A stretch of 63,317 bases of DNA, counting the filler, from Octopus bimaculoides (taxonomy: Eukaryota), in assembly GCF_001194135.2 (NCBI RefSeq). It is 8 parts of 6 records of this genome, joined end to end, with 100 filler letters (N's around TTAATTAATTAA, not from the genome) between each part and the next. Parts side by side here need not be neighbours in the genome. Positions count along the whole stretch, not along the records: positions 8,983 to 29,256 come from NC_069002.1; 7 more parts are not named here. The stretch is one strand, 5' to 3'. The position numbers and the translations under genes were made by a program. How positions within the stretch are numbered: position 1 is the first letter of the stretch; each line of letters starts with the position of its first letter. Positions 10,712 through 29,414 of this stretch are shown piece by piece. Below the pieces are notes generated by a model that saw only the letters and a program-made list of their open reading frames with translations, was not told the origin of the DNA and made no database searches.

Positions 10712-11466
10712 CAGAGTAAAGCCGCTTGGCAAAGATTGACCTTGATCTCTGCTGTGAATACATAATGCTTTAACGTTGTAGCTCACTTCCACTGTTTTAC
10801 AGCAGTGCTTGGAAGGAAGGTGTGCAGCGTGAGATCATCGCATTGACTATAACAGAAAGTTGAATGGAGAATCTTCTTCAAATTTTACCAAAAGCTTGAC
10901 CATACCAGCTCAGAGGCCCACGCAAGGTTTTCAGACAATATGAAATCTTGTGCAACTGAAACCCAAGGATCTTTTTTGGTCAGCTGAAAGCAGTTTTGGC
11001 ACAAACTTGGCAGGCACGCGTCTCATACCCAAATCTTCAGTGATAATGGACTGAACTGAATCGTAACTAATCTGCACATCCTCTGATAACTCACGGATGA
11101 TGATTCGACGATTTAACCTCAAAACAGCACGCACATCTGCGATGTTTTTCTCAGTTCTGCTGGTTCTTGGTTTCCCAGAACGTTCGTCAATATCGACATT
11201 CTTCGGCCATCTTGGAAATGTCTGAACCACTCGTATACTTGTGTGCGGCTCATACATTCCGCTCCATACACTTTCTGCAACTTTGCGCTAGCCTCTGAGC
11301 AGGTATCGTCATGACAACTTTCTCTGTCATGGTCAATGCAACAATCACACGCTACACACCGTCCTTCTAAGCACTGCTGTAAAGAACGGAAGTGATCTAG
11401 AAGTTAAAATTAAGTGCGCATGCACAGCAGAGTTTATTGTCAATCTTTTCCAAGCGGCTTCACTCA
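10712..11466 (-). mobile_element. mariner transposon remnant with ~60-bp TIRs
   Basis: ORF 10931-11257: DERSGKPRTSRTEKNIADVRAVLRLNRRIIIRELSEDVQISYDSVQSIITEDLGMRRVPAKFVPKLLS (mariner HTH plus WVPH-like motif); TIRs gagtaaagccgcttggcaaagattgac / gtcaatcttttccaagcggcttcactc. Confidence 0.9.
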
Positions 11467-11799: not shown

Positions 11800-11935
11800 G
11801 GTGTCGAAATGAACGCAGAAGTGAGATGAAGTGTTTTCCCAGTAACACAACGCACCACTCGGTCTAGGAATTGAAACCACAATATCGCGATCGCGAGTGC
11901 AGCAATATTTACCACTAGGCCATGCGCCCTCCTAC
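11800..11935 (-). mobile_element. SINE family C (tRNA-like head)
   Basis: reverse complement ggcgcatggcctagtggtaaa...gtggtttcaattcctagaccgagtggtgcgttgtgttactgggaaaacacttc, similar to 55072-55230. Confidence 0.7.
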
Positions 11936-13400: not shown

Positions 13401-14403
13401 TTTTGCTGAACTCATCTACCACACCCTAAGTATATATATATGTATATGTATATATNNNNNNNNNNNNNNNNNNNNNNNNNNNNNNNNNNNNNNNNNNNNN
13501 NNNNNNNNNNNNNNNNNNNNNNNNNNNNNNNNNNNNNNNNNNNNNNNNNNNNNNNNNNNNNNNNNNNNNNNNNNNNNNNNNNNNNNNNNNNNNNNNNNNN
13601 NNNNNNNNNNNNNNNNNNNNNNNNNNNNNNNNNNNNNNNNNNNNNNNNNNNNNNNNNNNNNNNNNNNNNNNNNNNNNNNNNNNNNNNNNNNNNNNNNNNN
13701 NNNNNNNNNNNNNNNNNNNNTATATATATATATATATATATATATGTAACGAACCCAAAACGTAGGCGTGTGGCTTCCAATACTCAGAGAACATATCGCA
13801 ATACATAGCTTCGGCATTATGGGATACCCATTCTGCCGGTGAAAAATAAAGAGACAAGAAATATATACAATAATCGAAGTAATCGAAGCATAGATTATAA
13901 ATGTGTTATACTTCGGTGCACTTTAACGATGAGGTGGGGTTTTAGGGGAGATGGGGTTTCGACACCACCGTGCACTTTATGAAACTTCGTCTGTGTGAAT
14001 ATCTTAGCATAGTAGACATGTGTAGAGTCATGCCTGATCGTATTGGCTAAACCCGTTTGCTGATCAGGGAGGAGCTTAAAGAACAGATTGGTTGGAATAT
14101 ATTCGATCGCAGAAGGAAAAGTGACATTCCGACCACCAGATAGACGCATTTAGCTTGTGACTGGTAACGTACAGTGAAAGTAAAAATTTGGGTCCAAGCT
14201 GCTGTAGCCCTGAAATCACAATACGTGGAGTTAATAAGCAGTGTTGAAGGGCGTGGGAGTCGAAAGAGAGAAAACAGAAGAGTGGTAATGAAAGGGAGAG
14301 AATGACATGTCATGAAATTCTGCTAATCGAAAATGTTAGGTATTATTCGGATTGCGAGAGGGAAACCTTCTAAATAGAGCAAGGTTTAGACTATTACCGC
14401 TTA

Positions 14404-14512
<109 letters not shown>

Positions 14513-14608
14513 TATACATACATACATACAATCATAAATACACAAAAATAATTTATACATACTTATATATGTATGTATATGTTTGTATATGAATGTGTGT
14601 GTATGTTC

Positions 14609-14642
<34 letters not shown>

Positions 14643-14868
14643 TTCCGTGTGTGTGCGCGCACATTACATGTATGCACGTAAACACCAAAAATCATAAATA
14701 AACCAAAATAATGATTATAATTCACTGCTGAGGAACGTAAAAAGAACAATATCAACAACAATCCAATATGGTAGCTTTGCTAGCACGCAAGATGTATATA
14801 AATGCTCCAATGCGGTAAATAATAACAGAGAGAGAGGGGGTAAGAGACAATGACAGAGAGAGAGGGAG

Positions 14869-14968
<100 letters not shown>

Positions 14969-15694
14969 CGACAGTGATGGGGTGAGAGAGACAGAGTCAG
15001 AGACAGAGGGAGAGTGATAGAGAGAGAAAGTGTGAGGGAGAGAAAGAAAGAGAGAGATAATAATAAGCGTTGACCTCAACCACCAACACCTTCGAACTTT
15101 CGAAACTCTGAAGTAGAAATTGTCCGCCATCTCTTATTTGCAAATGTCTACCGCTGGTAAAGCTAGATCAATCTTTAAAATGAAGTCACCGTTCATGATA
15201 TTTATGTCGGTTGAAAGGGATATTATCACGCTATACTGTTTTTAATAACTAAAGGTGATCTGTGTTGGTGGACGAATTTAACATAAAATTGGGTAGGGAG
15301 TGCATAAGTTTAGGATTCAGTTCTCTTTTACTGGTCAGTTTAGACTAAGAAGATTTCACCGTTTTCTTCTTTCATAGATATATGCGTGTATGTAAATCAT
15401 GATATAATTGGACTTTCTGACAAGAGTCAGAAGTCTAAAACAGTCGGGGAGAAGTGTAGTCTCTAAAATCGACTTTCACTGATTGTTTTCTTTTTGTTGA
15501 CCTCGTTGAGATTTGAACGCGAAAACATAAAAAGACGTCTCTAAACAATTGGCAGAAATGCTGAAATTAGTGAACAGTATTAGCTGATACTATTGATCCA
15601 ACTACTTACTCAGATTGTAAAAAGATGGAACAAATAACACAAGTCATTTTGTCGAGTGCTCTAACGATATTGTCACTCTGTTGCACTTCAATGT

Positions 15695-15823
15695 TTTCTA
15701 ATGAAAGCGCAAGGCCAGGAATTGTAAGGGAAAGGTATTAGTCGATGCCATCGACCCAATTACTTGGCTGGTACTTTATTTTATTGACTCTGAAGGGAAG
15801 AAAGGGGAAGTTGACCCAGGCAG
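15695..15823 (-). mobile_element. SINE family A body lacking its tRNA head
   Basis: gcgcaaggccaggaattg...gtcgatgccatcgacccaattacttggctggtactttattttattgactctgaagggaagaaaggggaagttgacccaggcag; similarity stops just before the B-box. Confidence 0.8.
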
Positions 15824-15967
15824 CGTTGTGCAGCTTTGACAGTCAGGTATGGCGGGGGACGGACGACTGAGCGGCGCGCTCGTCGGGCGGGCGCCGAGCT
15901 TCCTACGGCATCGCTGCCCAGCACCCTTTCCTGCAACGGAGCGACAGACGGCGTTTTCGTGTCCTGG
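15824..15967 (-). other. GC/CpG-rich spacer 3' of 5.8S, probable partial ITS2
   Basis: directly follows the 5.8S 3' end on the minus strand; sharply higher GC than the flanks; no 28S 5' motif reached. Confidence 0.65.
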
Positions 15968-16128
15968 CCGTCTCTCGACCGTACGGAGCCCCGGGACGAC
16001 AGCATCCCGGGGCCGCAATGTGTGTTCCAGGTGTCGATGTTCAGTGAGTCCTGCAATTTGCATCAGTTCACGCGGATAGCCGCGCTATTCATCGACGGAC
16101 GAACCGAGTGATCACCCGTCCACGGTTT
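15968..16128 (-). rRNA. 5.8S rRNA: orphan 5.8S rRNA copy (probably a pseudogene), about full length
   Basis: minus strand reads ggtgatcactcggttcgtccgtcgatgaatagcgcggctatccgcgtgaactgatgcaaattgcaggactcactgaacatcgacacctggaacacacattgcggccccgggatgctgtcgtcccggggc, matching the conserved 5.8S blocks GATCACTCGG, CGTCGATGAA, AATTGCAGGAC, GAACATCGACA, CACATTGCGGCCCCGGG; no 18S or 28S nearby. Confidence 0.93.
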
Positions 16129-16199
16129 CGGTACTTATCATTACACTACTGAAACGTTACTACTACGCTACTGAAAGCAGTTTGTTTGACACGCCAACA

Positions 16200-16950
16200 G
16201 TTAAGAACTGAAATTTTATGTGAGGGCAACAGCCAGTTACATGCACCCCGCTATGTGACTGATCTATTATTTCACCGAACCGGATACGATGAAGATTATA
16301 GTTGACCTTTATCGTATTCATTTCTAATATCTCTGAAATAAAGGAGTCAACCAGTAACAAAAACGTCCCCCTATGCCTTGAATCTCTCTCCATAATGACC
16401 ACTAATACGATTGCCAAAAAGTCAGATTCACTGGTAACTTAGTGTCTTATTTCACCGACCAGAAGAATCTTGCACCGGAGAAATTTGGTGAAAGTAATGT
16501 TGTCGCTCTCAATGTCTAGAAGATAGTCGACTGTGTCTGGCATGCGAATATCCTGTGTAAATTATCCAACCATGTGCCCTTATCTGTCTTTTACCTCTTG
16601 GATACTTAAATTTTATCAGTTCGCACTATCATGTTGTGAATTGACTGAGCTCTTATTTTCCCTCATTCTTTCAATTCTAGGTAGTCCCAGAGTTCGGTTT
16701 ATTCCTACACTCACTTCCTTCTATGCATCAAAAACTTACTTGCCGTCATGTATAACAACGTCCACTCATACACAGATGACATTATCCTCCACCCGAACAT
16801 TCTCCAGCCAGTAATTAGCCACTCGTAACATAGAGACTACAAAAGCAAGAAACTAACAAATACGACTTATAACAAGAAAACACTAACGCATTACACACCC
16901 TTTAATTAGAACCCTGAAAATTGCCCCAGTTGTTGGACTACACAATCACT
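16200..16950 (+). mobile_element. CR1/Jockey-group LINE reverse-transcriptase remnant
   Basis: frameshifted translation FGESNVVALNV*KIVDCVWHANILCKL ... SQSSVYSYTHFLLCIKNLL...VHSYTDDIILH, i.e. decayed LDISKAFDRVWH, PQGSVL and YADD motifs. Confidence 0.8.
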
Positions 16951-17337
16951 GAGAATCTCTCCAGGCACATATACGAGTAGCCAGGGCCGCACCCCGGTTT
17001 TTATCCTTCTCTTCACGGACAGAAGTTACTTTAGTCCCCAAGAATTGTTAACACTACAGAGGCTTTTCTTGTTGAAATTTACTTGCTGTAGATTAGCGTT
17101 CTCCTCGGGCCGTTATTTCTTTTGCAACCCTTTCGTTGATGGGAAAGATAGGGACCTATTCCATACTTATGTAAAATAAGATGACAGCCAATAAATTTTC
17201 CCGCTCCGAACCATTGGGAAACAATTACAATCGATTTGAAAACAAAACGACTGAATTTTATCTCAGTGTCTGTAACTTTTGACACTACATGTAGCCCAAA
17301 ATTAACAAATATTACAAACACACAGAGGCGACGGTCT

Positions 17338-17490
17338 AATTTCAGTTTCCGCCTAACAAATTCACTCACAAGGCTTTTTGTCGGCCCTTGAGTATCACGG
17401 AAGATACATGCCGAAAATAGACGCAATGGGATTGAACTCGTAAATATGTGGTTGGGAAGTAAACTTTCTACCACACAGCCACGCCTGGTA
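17338..17490 (-). mobile_element. SINE family B, 5' half
   Basis: tttcagtttccgcctaacaaattcactcacaaggc...tgtggttgggaagtaaactttctaccacacagccac. Confidence 0.8.
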
Positions 17491-18029
17491 TACAAACAGC
17501 CAATACTACTTAGAATAGATTATGGCGCCTAAGAAGCTTATGTTTAACCTAACACTATTTATTTGTTATGTACTTTCATTTCGTGTGATTTGCTGCTGTC
17601 ATTAACTCTGATATTCACCAACTAATATTAAAAAAAGTGTTGATAATAACAGCATCAATGATATTTTCCCAGCCTACTACAGTCACAGTCGTGACTATAA
17701 TCTTATTGGATTTATTACAAAAATGTATTAATATAGAATATTATAGACTATAGACTATCTTGTTAAAAATAATCGCAAAATTTTTGCGCTAATGTGCTAA
17801 GCTTTAAGAAATAACTTTATGAAATAACATGATCTGTTTAATGAGATTTCCCCTAGACATAGTTTTGTAGTGTGTCTATGGTAGGTGATATAGATAGCTA
17901 AATCTACCCCCCACCCAGTGTATTAGTGAGAAGATAAATGAAGAGCTTGAAGAAAAGCTATCTTGTGATTGTTACTTCGATAGTTAACGCTGAATTATCT
18001 CAGTACAGTTAGCTGTGTCAGAACTGCAG

Positions 18030-18200
18030 CCCTTTATGAGCGTGGTTTCAAGTTCGGTACCACTGTGGCACCATAGGCAAGTGTTTTGTCTTATAGCTCC
18101 GGGCCAACCAATGCCTTCAAAGGCTTGACAACCGGTGTTGGTTTGTTTTACGACATCCCGTAACTTAGAGATTCAGCTATAGAAACCGAGAAAATAAGAA
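18030..18200 (+). mobile_element. SINE family B, decayed
   Basis: ggtttcaagttcggtaccactgtggcaccataggcaagtgtt...gggccaacc...ttgacaaccggtgttggtttg. Confidence 0.7.
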
Positions 18201-18729
18201 CCAGATGTTATTCCATTCTATCCAGTTGTTGTGCAATACTTCATCCCTCCATACTGCTTCCGCTTCTACCATGTTCCGTTGGATCGACGACAGATGTGAG
18301 AGCGAATGTGTCTATGTCTGCTTGGGACTCCATCGACATCTAAAACAATTAACCCAAGCATGATACTTCCAACCAAGTCATATTCGCTTGGGAGTGACGG
18401 CTAAGCTTTATGTAGGTGATATGGCCCTCAACCGGAACAAGGTACATTAGGACAAGGTTACATCTATGGGTCGCTCCCAGTTATGGGACCGATTATTTAA
18501 AATCAAGGCTAAACGAGTGCAAGATATTCATATCGTTTAGCTTTTACTTGTTTCTGCCATTAGATTACGGCCATGCTACAGCACCGCCTTAAAATGTTTA
18601 GTCCATTTGTTCAACTAAAACACTCCAAGGCGCTGCCGTAGCATGGCTGTAATCGAATGACTGCAACAAACAAAGAATAAAAGATGAAAAAAAAAACAAT
18701 TATACATAGATTGATTGAATGTATATTGA

Positions 18730-19185
18730 TTTCAAATTTTGGCACAAGGACAGTAATTTCGGGGGAGAGGGTAAGTCGATTACATTGATCCCCCAGTACT
18801 CAAATGGTACTTATACTTTATTGACCCCACCCCCCCAAAAAAGAATGAAAGGCAAAAATCGACCTCGGTAGAATTTGAACTCAGAACGTGAACTGACAAA
18901 ATGCCGCTAAGCAGCTCGCCGCCTTTTATCATATATTTATTAATCACTCATTATAGATATATTCTTTTCTACTGTAAGCACAAGGCCCGAAATTTTGAGG
19001 AAGGGGGGGGGCACTCGATTAGATTGTCCCCCCACTACACAACTGGTACTTATTTTATCGACCCCGAAAGGATGAAAGGCAAAGTTGACCTCAGCAGAAT
19101 TTGAACTCAGAACGTAAAGACAGACGAAATACCGCTAAGCATTTCGGCCGGCGTGCTAACATTTCTGCCAGTTCGCCGCCTTACA
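18730..19185 (-). mobile_element. two adjacent SINE family A copies (18730-18925 and 18965-19185)
   Basis: both carry ggcacaagg...ctggtacttattttatcgaccccgaaaggatgaaaggcaaag...aatttgaactcagaacg...gctcgccgcctt. Confidence 0.92.
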
Positions 19186-19509
19186 TAACAGATATATCAA
19201 TTATTTACTGCTGTAACTTGGAAGAAAGGAACCATTGCAAGAAGTTTGGTAATGGTACTTAATTCTCAACTGACACACCTTAGAATTTATAACTTTATGT
19301 AGTTACAACATAGCACTATAAACGAATGTACCATGATATGGATGCGAATTCCGTTACTTACAATATTGGATTCCCGTTGGTTTACCGATCCCCAGTCGAT
19401 GAGAAACGTTTTGATTGGAAATAAAGACAAACAAGACAACGATGAAATTGTTTCAATTTCTTACAATTCAATTTCGCATTTGAAAGATGTGCGTTGATAG
19501 GTTTAAAGG

Positions 19510-19640
19510 GATGGCTGTGATTTAAAGAAACTCGCTTTGCAACCTGTCGGTCTCGGGTTCAGCCCCACTGCACCGCCCTTTGGCTAAGAGTCTTCTGCTG
19601 TAGACCCAAATCGACCAATACCGTATAGAAATCTGTGGTG
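19510..19640 (-). mobile_element. SINE family B, 5' half
   Basis: reverse complement gcgagtttctttaaatcacagcc head and cccttggctaagagtcttctgctgtag body. Confidence 0.7.
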
Positions 19641-19686
19641 TGTGTGTGTGTGGGGGGGTGTATGATGTGCATATGTGTGTATGTGT

Positions 19687-19724
<38 letters not shown>

Positions 19725-19728
<4 letters not shown>

Positions 19729-19920
19729 CAAAAAAACAATAACAAACAAACAAAAAAACAACAAAGTGAGGACGTGATATGGATAGTATTATTGGACGCT
19801 CAGGAAAGGAAAGAGAGAGTGTATGACGTTTCGGGTGTAGCCCTTCGTCGGAAAGATGGAAAGTTCGGAGAATGGAAGAACGGAGAAAGAGGAAAATGGT
19901 ACCGATGCCCACGAGGTTAT
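19725..19920 (-). mobile_element. short Penelope-pLTR-like element with a hammerhead-like core
   Basis: minus strand CCGACGA-A-GGG ctaca CCC-GAAAC-GTC at 19851-19825; 3' part aligns with 9268-9375. Confidence 0.65.
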
Positions 19921-20019
19921 NNNNNNNNNNNNNNNNNNNNNNNNNNNNNNNNNNNNNNNNNNNNNNNNNNNNNNNNNNNNNNNNNNNNNNNNNNNNNNNN
20001 NNNNNNNNNNNNNNNNNNN

Positions 20020-20114: not shown

Positions 20115-20460
20115 TGACCGCCGCCCCTTGACTACTGGTGTCGGTTTGTTTACGTCTCCACTAGTTAAAAGAACTGGAAAAGAGACCGATAGAATAAAAG
20201 TTTTAACTGAATACCATAATTCCCTTTTCATTAAGAACTCTTTCTACTCAAGACACAAGGGTTGAAAATTTGCGGAGAACGGGAGAGTTGATTACATCCA
20301 TCCCAGAACTCAACTTGTACCTATTTCATCGACCCTGAAATGATGAAAGGAAAAGTGGGTTTTTGAACTGAGTAGGATTTGAACTTCGAATATAGTGACG
20401 GGCGAAATATCGCTAAGCATTTTGTCGAGTGTGCTAACGATTCTGCCAGCTCACCGCCTT
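20115..20460. mobile_element. SINE family B 3' half (+, 20115-20220) followed by SINE family A (-, 20245-20460)
   Basis: ttgactactggtgtcggtttgtttacgtctcc...gagaccgatagaataa; then cacaagggttg...atcgaccctgaaatgatgaaagg...gccagctcaccgcctt. Confidence 0.8.
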
Positions 20461-24301: not shown

Positions 24302-25752
24302 TCTTCTAGGGGAAAGGAGCCGTTTACACGTGATCTCGGTGTCACATTCGTTGAAAGCATGCGAAATAACACGGAAAAGAAAAAAAACCACGAAACAAAC
24401 CTCCGTTGCTGGGAAACTGAGTTTTCTGGTGACCCAACGGGTCTCGGGTAGTCTAGTTATAAATACCACTTTGATACATACACATGCACGTGCACACACA
24501 CACACACACACACAGACATACACATATGTATATGTACACACACATCTATATACATACACGTATTTGTGTATAAAATATGTATTACTGTATATGTGTGTAT
24601 AACGATGTTCGTACATGCGTTCCTACACGAATCAACACATGTCTATATATTTAAGTGCAAGTAACAATAAGCTCTAGTTCTGCAATCTGTGTTATACGTT
24701 TTCATCATATTTTTAGATTAGTTTTTTTGAAAAAATCATTACAATTTGAAATCTATATAGAATCGTTTTATCTCTTTATATCTTTATTTATAGAACACAA
24801 TCCACATTTAGTAGGTGTCTGTAACATTAATACACACACATACACACATATACACCACTGTCACACTGCACACCTATAAACCCACCTACATAACCAGACT
24901 AATGCAAGCCTTCCGGTAATTATCTGATTGTTTAAGAGTGCAGCTAATGAATTATTTCGCAAGTTGACTCGAGGAAAGGTTAAAAGGAATTTTCATCGAA
25001 TTTCAATGCACCACGTGATCGAAAACGCATCCAGAAGCGCATGTATTAATTCATACTTATACATGTGTGCATGTGAATAATATACACACACATATATGTA
25101 TATATATATATCTGTGTGTGTGTGTGTGTTATGTATATATATATACTATATAGACGTATATATATTTCTTTGTGTGTTTGTCTTTCTCTCTCTCTATATA
25201 TATATATCTGTAAAAGCACGTGACACTTATTCGGTAGCCATGATATATATATATATATCAACATATATATATATATCAATATATATATATATGTATNNNN
25301 NNNNNNNNNNNNNNNNNNNNNNNNNNNNNNNNNNNNNNNNNNNNNNNNNNNNNNNNNNNNNNNNNNNNNNNNNNNNNNNNNNNNNNNNNNNNNNNNNNNN
25401 NNNNNNNNNNNNNNNNNNNNNNNNNNNNNNNNNNNNNNNNNNNNNNNNNNNNNNNNNNNNNNNNNNNNNNNNNNNNNNNNNNNNNNNNNNNNNNNNNNNN
25501 NNNNNNNNNNNNNNNNNNNNNNNNNNNNNNNNNNNNNNNNNNNNNNNNNNNNNNNNNNNNNNNNNNNNNNNNNNNNNNNNNNNNNNNNNNNNNNNNNNNN
25601 NNNNNNNNNNNNNNNNNNNNNNNNNNNNNNNNNNNNNNNNNNNNNNNNNNNNNNNNNNNNNNNNNNNNNNNNNNNNNNNNNNNNNNNNNNNNNNNNNNNN
25701 NNNNNNNNNNNNNTGAACCTAAATTCGATAAAAGTCACTTTGTCATGCACTA

Positions 25753-26129: not shown

Positions 26130-26255
26130 TACCACCGAGATACACTGTGCCATTCAGCCTTTCGGGATCAATAAAATAAAGTACCAGTCAAGTAATGGGA
26201 TCGATGACATCGACTAACCTTTTCCTTAAAAATTGCTGTTCTTGTGTCAAAATTT
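26130..26255 (+). mobile_element. SINE family A body, plus strand
   Basis: ccattcagcctttcgggatcaataaaataaagtaccagtcaagtaatgggatcgatg...cttgtgtcaaaatttgaa. Confidence 0.75.
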
Positions 26256-27964: not shown

Positions 27965-28100
27965 TTTTTTTTAAAGGTGAGTGAACTGGGGCAACGTGAA
28001 ATAAAGTGTCTTACTCAAGAACACAACACACAACCCAATCTGGGAATCGAACTCATAACCTCACGATTAGAAGCCCGACACTCTAACCACTGATCCATGC
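27965..28100 (-). mobile_element. SINE family C
   Basis: gagtgaactggggcaacgtgaaataaagtgtcttactcaagaacacaac...gggaatcgaactc...ctaaccactga, reverse complement of the 55072 copy. Confidence 0.82.
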
Positions 28101-28356
28101 CACTTTGCTCTATGTAAATTAAAGTTTCCCCCAATGCATATGCACTCGCGCGTAGGTGTACACCTAAAATACGCAACTAAAACTGCATGTACACACGCAC
28201 ACACAAACGTACACACACACACACACGCATATACACTCACGCAGACACACACACATTTACACGCGCATGCATTCACATTACACACTGCTTATAAACAGAT
28301 ACATGCACAGGTAAACATAAATACCCACACCTCACAAACACACATATATACACATA

Positions 28357-28910
28357 TGAGGAGGTACTCCAAAGTAACCGGAAACATTCTCTGTGGGACA
28401 AGTCCATTGTAATTCGGGCTTTCGATGCCAGAAGCCACTTGATGCAACCCTCAGGCATCAGACTGCCAACCGGCGTTGTCATGTGTAATCATATTGTCAC
28501 ATGGCATGTCTTTGTTTTGAAGTACTTCTCCACTGTTCGTCGATTTTTGCGATGGCTGAAGGAAAGAGACAGCGTGCTTCTGAGAAATTCTGTTTTCTGC
28601 TGGGGAAAACAGCGGTCGAAACAGCTGTCACGCTTCAAACAGCTTACAAGGATGCTGCCATGAGCAAAGCACAAGTTTATGGGTGGTTCCCATGCTTTAG
28701 GAATGGTTACTTGTCATTTCAAGACCAACCTCGCTCAGGCCGTTCGTCGACCTTCGGAATAATTGAAGACATCAGGAAATTTCATGAACTGATCTTGGAG
28801 AACCATCACCGAGCAATTGACAAACTTGTTGACATGGCTGGTGTGGCCTGGAGCTTGTGCCAACGAATTTTGAGCGAGGAAGAGTTGCAGCAAAATTTTT
28901 CTCGCTTGTT
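28357..28910 (+). mobile_element. mariner transposon 5' fragment (N-terminal HTH)
   Basis: left end TA|tgaggaggtactccaaagtaaccgg; ORF QRASEKFCFLLGKTAVETAVTLQTAYKDAAMSKAQVYGWFPCFRNG..SFQDQPRSGRSS. Confidence 0.9.
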
Positions 28911-28974
28911 CACCGAAGATCATGTCTGTGTGTTTGTCTGTGTGTTTGTGTTTGTGTTTGTGTGTGTGTGTGTA

Positions 28975-29020
<46 letters not shown>

Positions 29021-29414
29021 GGGGGTGTCTACAAGTATATAAACATAAAATCTCCATCCCATGTTTGGATAGATATGTAAACACGTCTCTGTGGAAAATA
29101 TTTGCTCGTGTGAAAGCAAAAGAGTTGCTTATTAGATAAATAACTATTAAGTATTGTTCGTAGCCAGCGCCTGGGATGCAAATTCTGACAACAATTCTGT
29201 GGTCTCCGAGTTTGTTTTTACTAGAAACAGATACAAGCTACTGTATTTGTTGCAGGNNNNNNNNNNNNNNNNNNNNNNNNNNNNNNNNNNNNNNNNNNNN
29301 TTAATTAATTAANNNNNNNNNNNNNNNNNNNNNNNNNNNNNNNNNNNNNNNNNNNNGTGGGGGCAGAAGAAGAAAAGCGCAGCAGCATGATGCATTAAAG
29401 AAAATGTCTTTTTA

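What the first reader, a model, noticed from the sequence alone, without database searches (positions are those of the whole stretch)
15695..16128. Orphan 5.8S rRNA plus partial ITS2 joined to a SINE body in place of the tRNA head
Seen: on the minus strand the segment starts at about the mature 5.8S 5' end. It runs through the whole 5.8S and ~140 nt of GC-rich spacer, then continues in the same orientation into the family A SINE body. The junction lies just downstream of where the tRNA-derived B-box ends in intact copies. No SINE head is on the far side, and no 18S or 28S is present. Established: 5.8S plus the 5' part of ITS2 is a known pre-rRNA processing intermediate (yeast 7S, mammalian 12S), and SINE heads derived from tRNA, 7SL, 5S, 28S and snRNA are known; I know of no 5.8S-headed SINE. 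Inference: this is a retrocopy of a pre-rRNA intermediate, a template-switch chimera, or a member of a 5.8S-headed SINE subfamily. Caveat: the SINE part is visibly decayed while the rDNA part keeps its CpGs, so the two may differ in age, with an rDNA fragment replacing the head of an older SINE.
Basis: partly seen in the sequence, partly recalled or inferred. Interest (0 to 1): 0.72.

Follow-up and report, generated by a model that had tools for sequence, protein, structure and literature searches.

The report
Orphan 5.8S rRNA copy fused to SINE
A stray copy of the 5.8S ribosomal RNA plus about 140 bases of GC-rich spacer is joined head-to-tail to the back half of a common octopus SINE; it is most likely a one-off accident of reverse transcription, not a new mobile-element family.

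Summary
Rfam finds a complete 5.8S rRNA on the minus strand (16127..15969, model 1-154, 92 bits, E 4e-22) and no 18S or 28S in the piece. A 141-152 nt spacer follows (67% GC). It runs directly, in the same orientation, into the body and tail of SINE family A (15827..15693, profile positions 83-219 of 221, E 5e-18). The SINE head with its A and B boxes is missing on both sides.

Four compensatory pair changes against one broken pair show that the source 5.8S was functional but derived, and that the copy has decayed little.

The best explanation is a dead-on-arrival chimeric retrocopy. A LINE reverse transcriptase began on a SINE RNA, left it just 3' of the B box, and jumped to a 3'-extended 5.8S precursor, which it copied to the mature 5' end.

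Several points are not shown:
- No significant target-site duplication was found, though the test had low power.
- The spacer could not be confirmed as octopus ITS2.

A 5.8S-headed SINE family is unsupported: the rDNA part has no pol III boxes, and the 42 kb of octopus DNA available holds no second copy.

The parts
15969..16127 (-). Complete 5.8S rRNA-derived segment (159 nt). Its 5' end coincides with position 1 of the Rfam model.
   Evidence: cmscan RF00002, 92 bits, E 4e-22, model 1-154/154. Of 25 modelled pairs, 17 are unchanged, 2 changed on one side, 4 are compensatory and 1 is truly broken (G106->A).
15828..15968 (-). GC-rich spacer directly 3' of the 5.8S, 141 nt (up to 152 nt if the junction is at 15817). 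Presumed to be the 5' part of ITS2; this is not verified.
   Evidence: 67% GC and CpG o/e 1.12. No Rfam hit. No similarity to the SINE head. The fold is no better than shuffled sequence, z +1.9.
15817..15827 (-). Junction zone between the spacer and the SINE; low-confidence start of the SINE alignment (AACGCTGCCTG).
   Evidence: nhmmer posterior probabilities are 4-7 at the first positions. Forcing an extension through the B box gains only 0.5 bit.
15693..15827 (-). 5'-truncated SINE family A body with its own 3' tail (profile positions 83-219 of 221). The A box and the B-box core are missing.
   Evidence: nhmmer E 5e-18, 58.7 bits. 80% identical to the copy at 26150-26244.
16128..16309 (-). 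Neighbour, not part of the chimera: a diverged headless SINE-like body (16309..16203) with a tail-like stretch running up to the 5.8S start.
   Evidence: nhmmer profile positions 92-201, E 2e-5; alignment A1.
15608..15675 (-). Neighbour: the decayed head of another same-orientation SINE. It begins within a few bases of the chimera's tail.
   Evidence: nhmmer profile positions 14-79, E 2e-3; BLAST hit to copy C's head.

Best explanation
This is a single, dead-on-arrival chimeric retrocopy made by template switching during target-primed reverse transcription.

Proposed sequence of events:
1. The reverse transcriptase of the LINE that mobilises octopus SINE family A started on a SINE RNA at its 3' tail.
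2. It copied about 135 nt, up to the edge of the structured, promoter-bearing head, just 3' of the B box.
3. It then jumped onto the 3' end of an abundant nucleolar RNA: a 5.8S precursor still carrying about 140-150 nt of ITS2. This is the class of the yeast and human 7S pre-rRNA.
4. It copied that RNA to its already matured 5' end, and the cDNA was integrated.

Shown: the architecture, the boundaries, the orientation, the absence of a head, ITS1, 18S and 28S, and the structural integrity of the 5.8S.

Inferred: the RNA origin, the template jump, the identity of the spacer as ITS2, and that the locus is unique. The product has no promoter and no function.
For: - The two parts are fused directly in the same orientation, and only the 3' part carries a retroposon tail.
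- The 5' border of the rDNA part falls on 5.8S model position 1, and GC drops from 55-60% to 37-40% there. A random DNA break would rarely land there; an RNA 5' end would.
- No ITS1-like sequence, 18S or 28S is present.
- 5' truncation is common in this SINE family: profile starts at 47, 74, 83 and 92 in four of the eight pieces seen. That is expected for copies made by LINE reverse transcription.
- The missing head is not on the far side, so the rDNA piece did not simply insert into a SINE.
- The sequence after the SINE tail is an AT-rich SINE head, not more spacer, so the SINE did not insert into a longer rDNA fragment.
- The 5.8S has 4 compensatory pair changes against 1 broken pair, so it was copied from a functional gene.
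- Template switching by LINE reverse transcriptase is the accepted route for chimeric retrocopies and for head replacement in mollusc SINEs (PMC4758252; bioRxiv 10.1101/2025.02.02.635956).
Against: - No significant target-site duplication flanks the unit. The test is weak here: the plausible duplication around intact copy A reaches only p 0.14, and TSDs were found for only 4 of 34 mollusc CORE SINE copies in PMC4758252.
- The spacer could not be compared with octopus rDNA, so 'ITS2' and 'ends at a processing site' are untested. Its fold is no better than shuffled sequence.
- The locus sits in a dense same-orientation cluster of SINE pieces, so adjacency through separate events is possible.
- No reads or second assembly could be examined.
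Confidence: 0.55

Rival explanations
1. Two or more separate events at the DNA level. An orphan rDNA fragment (captured at a break, or left over from an ectopic rDNA copy) and a 5'-truncated SINE came to lie side by side through independent insertion or deletion in a SINE-rich hotspot.
For: - The neighbourhood is a pile-up of same-orientation SINE pieces: 16309..16203, 15827..15693, 15675..15608, and further pieces downstream.
- No target-site duplication ties the two parts together.
- 5.8S+ITS-2 pseudogenes are known elsewhere, for example in triatomine bugs (PMC4489472).
Against: - The rDNA part begins exactly at the mature 5.8S 5' end, which a DNA break does not explain.
- No spacer sequence lies beyond the SINE tail and no SINE head lies beyond the 5.8S, so a simple insertion of one into the other is excluded and an extra deletion would be needed.
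- No duplication flanks the SINE body alone or the rDNA part alone (p 0.88 and 0.28).
Confidence: 0.22
2. The locus is a member of an amplifying SINE subfamily whose head is 5.8S plus spacer in place of the usual A/B-box head.
For: - The junction sits at the head/body boundary, where SINE modules are known to be exchanged (PMC4758252).
- The SINE tail needed for mobilisation is intact.
- SINEs with 5S and 28S rRNA heads exist (PMC10946416).
Against: - No A box or B box with <=2 mismatches lies in 15817-16127, and 5.8S is a pol I product.
- No second copy occurs in the 20 kb piece plus 22 kb of Octopus sinensis.
- No translated frame of the unit matches anything in a database of 5.8 billion proteins.
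- Neither the rDNA/TE review nor the L1 chimera catalogue lists a 5.8S-derived element.
Confidence: 0.08
3. Assembly artefact: the short-read scaffold joined rDNA-derived reads to SINE reads wrongly.
For: The scaffold has N gaps at 13456-13720, 19921-20019 and 25297-25713, so it is a gapped draft. No reads could be checked.
Against: - The finding lies inside a gap-free stretch, 13721-19920.
- Two wrong joins would be needed, one on each side.
- The rDNA and the SINE share no long identical word at either junction that could mislead an assembler.
- The 5.8S carries a pseudogene-type change in a conserved helix, unlike reads from the functional array.
Confidence: 0.05
4. Tripartite version of the main model: after reaching the 5.8S 5' end, the reverse transcriptase jumped a second time onto another SINE RNA. 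One event would then have produced the upstream headless SINE body, the rDNA part and the downstream SINE body.
For: - The upstream SINE-like body with its tail-like stretch runs up to the 5.8S start and is itself 5'-truncated at nearly the same profile position (92 against 83).
- Double template jumps are documented in Magnaporthe (PMC2104539, listed).
Against: - The upstream body is far more diverged from the family profile (17.6 against 58.7 bits) and belongs to a different variant.
- About 15-30 nt between its canonical tail and the 5.8S are not clearly SINE.
- No duplication flanks the three-part unit (p 0.12).
Confidence: 0.07

Closest known systems
Chimeric retrocopies made by LINE reverse-transcriptase template switching (U6/L1, U3/L1, 5S/L1, 28S/L1, Alu/L1 in mammals; MINE and tripartite chimeras in Magnaporthe)
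   Same: A small, abundant, structured non-coding RNA is fused in sense to the 5'-truncated 3' part of a LINE-mobilised element. The 5' partner reaches its own 5' end. The copies are one-off and do not propagate (bioRxiv 10.1101/2025.02.02.635956; PMC2104539).
   Different: - The 5' partner here is 5.8S with a 3' spacer extension, which is not in the published lists I could read.
- The 3' partner is a SINE rather than the LINE itself.
- The host is a cephalopod.
- The target-site duplication that defines the mammalian cases was not found.
SINEs with rRNA-derived heads (5S-headed SINE3, AmnSINE1 and others; 28S-derived SINE28), and head replacement in mollusc SINEs
   Same: An rRNA-derived 5' module is joined to a SINE body and LINE-type tail at the head/body boundary. 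Template switching is the proposed mechanism (PMC10946416; PMC4758252).
   Different: - 5S carries its own pol III promoter; 5.8S does not, and no A/B boxes are present.
- No evidence of more than one copy.
7S pre-rRNA (yeast, human): 5.8S with a 3' extension into ITS2, left by cleavage at site C2 and trimmed by the exosome
   Same: It has a mature 5.8S 5' end and a 3' extension. That the extension is on the order of 140 nt comes from my own knowledge; the pathway is described in PMC5702609.
   Different: Nothing is known here about octopus ITS2 length or cleavage sites, so the match in length may be coincidence. The true 3' end is blurred by a 10-nt uncertainty at the junction.
ps(5.8S+ITS-2) rDNA pseudogene of triatomine bugs
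   Same: A paralogous, non-functional copy of 5.8S plus ITS-2 outside the functional array (PMC4489472, abstract).
   Different: As far as the abstract shows, that pseudogene is described only as a paralogue of the 5.8S gene and ITS-2 carried by many triatomine species, whereas this copy is cut off after about 150 nt of spacer and fused to a SINE.

Membership tests
Template-switch chimeric retrocopy | Two unrelated RNA-derived parts are fused directly in the same orientation | tested here: met
   5.8S and spacer at 16127..15828, SINE body at 15827..15693, both on the minus strand with no intervening tail.
Template-switch chimeric retrocopy | The 3' part is the 3' end, with tail, of a LINE-mobilised element, truncated at its 5' side | tested here: met
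   Profile positions 83-219 of 221. Other copies are truncated at positions 47, 74 and 92.
Template-switch chimeric retrocopy | The 5' part starts at the 5' end of its source RNA | tested here: met
   cmscan model position 1 falls at 16127. The upstream sequence is AT-rich and SINE-tail-like. Precision is a few nt; the octopus 5.8S 5' end itself is unknown.
Template-switch chimeric retrocopy | One target-site duplication flanks the whole chimera | tested here: inconclusive
   Best local matches are no better than shuffles. The test has low power in AT-rich flanks: control copy A reaches only p 0.14.
Template-switch chimeric retrocopy | An empty site exists in relatives or alleles (single insertion event) | not testable with these tools
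No orthologous locus was reachable.
SINE family with a 5.8S head | Many dispersed copies share the same junction and have different flanks | not testable with these tools
   No octopus genome search was available. None was found in the 42 kb held. Protein-space and collection scans were empty.
SINE family with a 5.8S head | The head contains an internal pol III promoter | tested here: not met
   No A box (TRGCNNAGTGG) or B box (GGTTCGANNCC) with <=2 mismatches lies within 15817-16127.
SINE family with a 5.8S head | A 3' tail shared with a partner LINE | tested here: inconclusive
   The tail matches family A's tail, but the partner LINE was not identified.
Genomic rDNA unit or orphon (DNA-level copy) | 5.8S is flanked by ITS1/18S and by full ITS2/28S | tested here: not met
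   No SSU or LSU hit in the piece at gathering score, nor at E<=10 in 15300-16700. GC falls to about 40% at 16128.
7S-type pre-rRNA as source | The spacer is the species' ITS2 and ends at a processing site | not testable with these tools
   No octopus rDNA could be obtained.
CORE-SINE superfamily (for the family A body) | The central domain is homologous to the CORE of MIR or the octopus OR elements | tested here: inconclusive
   Alignment to a MIR consensus recalled from memory was not significant. No reference octopus OR1/OR2 sequence was available.
tRNA-derived SINE (family A head) | The head is recognisable as tRNA-like | tested here: not met
   ARAGORN finds no tRNA in the piece. No Rfam tRNA hit at E<=10 over copies A to C. 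Only A/B-box-like motifs are visible, for example at 20438-20448 and 20375-20385.

The most novel reading that the evidence does not exclude
The unit is one copy of a so far undescribed octopod retroposon family whose 5' module is 5.8S plus ITS2. It would be mobilised through the SINE family A tail and transcribed by read-through or from a cryptic promoter. That would be the first 5.8S-derived SINE-like element.
Probability: 0.08. Interest if true: 0.7.

Novelty: new member of a known kind. Interest (0 to 1): 0.3.

Why it matters
If the retrocopy reading is right, the locus is a fossil of an octopus pre-rRNA processing intermediate, with a mature 5' end and an untrimmed 3' end. It would show that the reverse transcriptase that moves octopus SINEs can pick up nucleolar precursor RNAs. 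It would add 5.8S to the short list of RNAs known to be captured this way, which currently covers U snRNAs, 5S, 28S, 7SL, 7SK, Y RNAs and tRNA. It would also illustrate, in a mollusc, the head-swapping step by which new SINE families are thought to arise. Here the result would be a dead end, because the new head has no promoter.

In practice, it warns annotators that an isolated Rfam 5.8S hit in cephalopod assemblies need not mark an rDNA locus.

Tried and rejected
- **Reads:** I did not try run ids from memory.
- **Paralogues or the true rDNA through protein space:** the 95-aa ORF across the junction is not on record. Neither that ORF nor a concatenation of the five other long frames found any homologue.
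- **Nearby ORFs, to fetch another assembly of the locus:** not on record.
- **Pattern scans:** scans for the unusual 5.8S helix variant and for the spacer end found nothing in JGI metagenome contigs. A scan for the 5.8S helix variant alone found nothing in GTDB genomes.
- **Literal sequence strings in the paper library:** nothing.
- **Spacer as a diverged, GC-rich SINE head:** rejected.
- **SINE homology running on through the B box with a 10-nt insertion:** rejected.
- **Spacer as a short ITS2 followed by the 28S 5' end:** no LSU hit.
- **Local tandem array of SINE bodies:** TRF finds none.
- **CORE-SINE affinity of the body:** not significant against a recalled MIR consensus.
- **Target-site duplications:** six flank pairings were tested across five insertion scenarios, and none was significant.
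- **ITS2-like structure in the spacer:** none, z +1.9.

Full report
**What is there**

On the minus strand, Rfam's 5.8S model matches 16127..15969 end to end: model positions 1-154, 92 bits against a gathering score of 42, E 4e-22. It is the only Rfam family that reaches its threshold in the piece 8983-29256. A permissive scan of 15300-16700 at E<=10 gave no small- or large-subunit rRNA match.

Directly 3' of the 5.8S lies 141-152 nt of GC-rich sequence, 15968..15817, with 67% GC and CpG o/e 1.12. GC falls to about 40% at both outer borders of the rDNA-like block.

The sequence then continues in the same orientation into a repeat. I built a profile from three copies of this repeat in the piece: 19182-18963, 20460-20239 and 18922-18727. 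nhmmer aligns 15827..15693 to profile positions 83-219 of 221, with E 5e-18. The first 82 positions are absent. These carry the A-box-like and B-box-like motifs.

The absence of the head is real:
- The spacer has no significant similarity to the head (p 0.16 and 0.70).
- An attempt to extend the SINE homology through the B box by deleting 10 nt gained only 0.5 bit.

So the junction lies at 15817-15827.

**Surroundings**

No head lies beyond the 5.8S. Upstream, in the minus sense, there is another diverged, headless SINE-like body at 16309..16203 (profile 92-201, E 2e-5), followed by a tail-like stretch. Downstream, the decayed head of a further same-orientation SINE begins within a few bases of the chimera's tail (15675..15608, E 2e-3).

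Intact copies A and B are likewise arranged head-to-tail. TRF finds no tandem array.

The finding lies in a gap-free stretch, 13721-19920, of a gapped scaffold.

A 22-kb locus of Octopus sinensis (CM016879.1) contains one family A copy, truncated at profile position 74. The family is therefore octopod, and 5' truncation is common: profile starts at 47, 74, 83 and 92.

**State of the 5.8S**

Twenty of the 79 highly conserved consensus positions differ. Even so, the structure is intact. Of 25 modelled pairs:
- 17 are unchanged;
- 2 are changed on one side but still pair;
- 4 are changed on both sides and still pair;
- 1 is non-standard in the consensus itself;
- 1 is truly broken, G106 to A, a CpG-to-CpA change in the near-universal GAACGCA motif.

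Four compensatory changes against one broken pair mean the source was a functional but derived 5.8S gene, and the copy has decayed little since. A simple binomial estimate puts decay at up to about 12% per site.

The SINE part is 80% identical to its closest relative in the piece. CpG retention is weak evidence, because background CpG o/e is 0.8-0.9.

**Mechanism**

The simplest account is a template-switch chimeric retrocopy. Reverse transcription starts on the SINE tail, stops at the border of the head, jumps to the 3' end of a 3'-extended 5.8S precursor, and runs to that RNA's mature 5' end.

Three observations argue for an RNA source and a single event:
- The left border coincides with 5.8S position 1.
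- No spacer lies beyond the SINE tail, so the SINE did not insert into a longer rDNA fragment.
- No SINE head lies beyond the 5.8S, so the rDNA piece did not insert into a whole SINE.

The literature supports the mechanism:
- Template switching is the accepted origin of U6/L1, 5S/L1, 28S/L1 and similar chimeras (bioRxiv 10.1101/2025.02.02.635956).
- It is also the accepted origin of head replacement in mollusc SINEs (PMC4758252).
- Neither that catalogue nor the rDNA/TE review (PMC10946416) lists a 5.8S-derived case.
- A 5.8S with part of ITS2 attached is the form of the 7S pre-rRNA (PMC5702609). That its extension is on the order of 140 nt is my own knowledge.

**What is missing**

- No significant target-site duplication was found for the whole unit, for either part alone, or for larger units. 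The test has little power in these AT-rich flanks: the plausible duplication around intact copy A gives only p 0.14. TSDs were found for only 4 of 34 mollusc CORE SINE copies analysed in PMC4758252.
- The spacer could not be compared with octopus rDNA, and it shows no excess structure. 'ITS2' therefore rests on position and composition only.
- Indirect routes found nothing: ORF look-ups, protein searches, pattern scans and literal string search.

**Rivals**

- **Separate DNA-level events in a SINE hotspot** remain possible, but they need an extra deletion and do not explain the exact 5' border.
- **A 5.8S-headed SINE family** lacks a promoter (no A/B box within 15817-16127) and lacks any second copy in the 42 kb held.
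- **Misassembly** would need two wrong joins without shared words.
- **A tripartite double-jump version** that includes the upstream SINE body is conceivable but unsupported.

**Verdict**

It is most likely an ordinary, if rare, by-product of retroposition: a new member of the known class of template-switch chimeras, with an unusual 5' partner. I rate the interest as moderate to low unless a genome-wide search shows multiple copies.

Noticed in passing
window 18724-19182 (-), and 15545-16309 (-): SINE copies tend to sit head-to-tail in the same orientation, with a new copy starting within 0-40 nt of the previous tail. This suggests the retroposition machinery prefers SINE tails or AT-rich (ATATAT-like) targets.
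   Followed up: partly
window 10931-11257 (-) and 28501-29139 (+): There are two mariner-type transposase N-terminal fragments (HTH_48). The second is 100% identical to the first exon of a 160-aa Metaclust gene model (P0001). The nearest named relative is 'protein GVQW3' of Octopus sinensis.
   Followed up: partly
window 15440-15530 (-): This stretch has a B-box-like motif plus GAGGTCAAC, as in family A, but is followed by a different body. It may belong to a second SINE family sharing the head. No other copy occurs in the 42 kb held.
   Followed up: partly
window 11860-11925 (-) and 28040-28110 (-): A perfect A box (TGGCCTAGTGG at 11912-11922) lies near a B-box-like motif (11867-11877). A one-mismatch B box (28043-28053) lies near A-box-like motifs. 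These may be other tRNA-derived repeats. ARAGORN calls no tRNA here.
   Followed up: no
window 19667-19734 (+): Sub-threshold Rfam hits to mir-297 and mir-1277 fall on a (TG)n(TA)n microsatellite. They are low-complexity false positives.
   Followed up: yes
window 13456-13720, 19921-20019, 25297-25713: Assembly gaps (runs of N) are flanked by microsatellites, so the source is a gapped draft scaffold.
   Followed up: yes
window 16128-16175 (-): The tail region of the upstream SINE-like body contains two tandem, diverged units: TTTCAGTAGCGTAGTAGTAACG and TTTCAGTAGTGTAATGATAAGTACCGA. They end at the 5.8S start.
   Followed up: no
L001 7574-7715 (-): In Octopus sinensis, a 5'-truncated family A SINE appears to lie inside the C-terminal part of a mariner-like element. 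This is from my own reading of the sequence.
   Followed up: no
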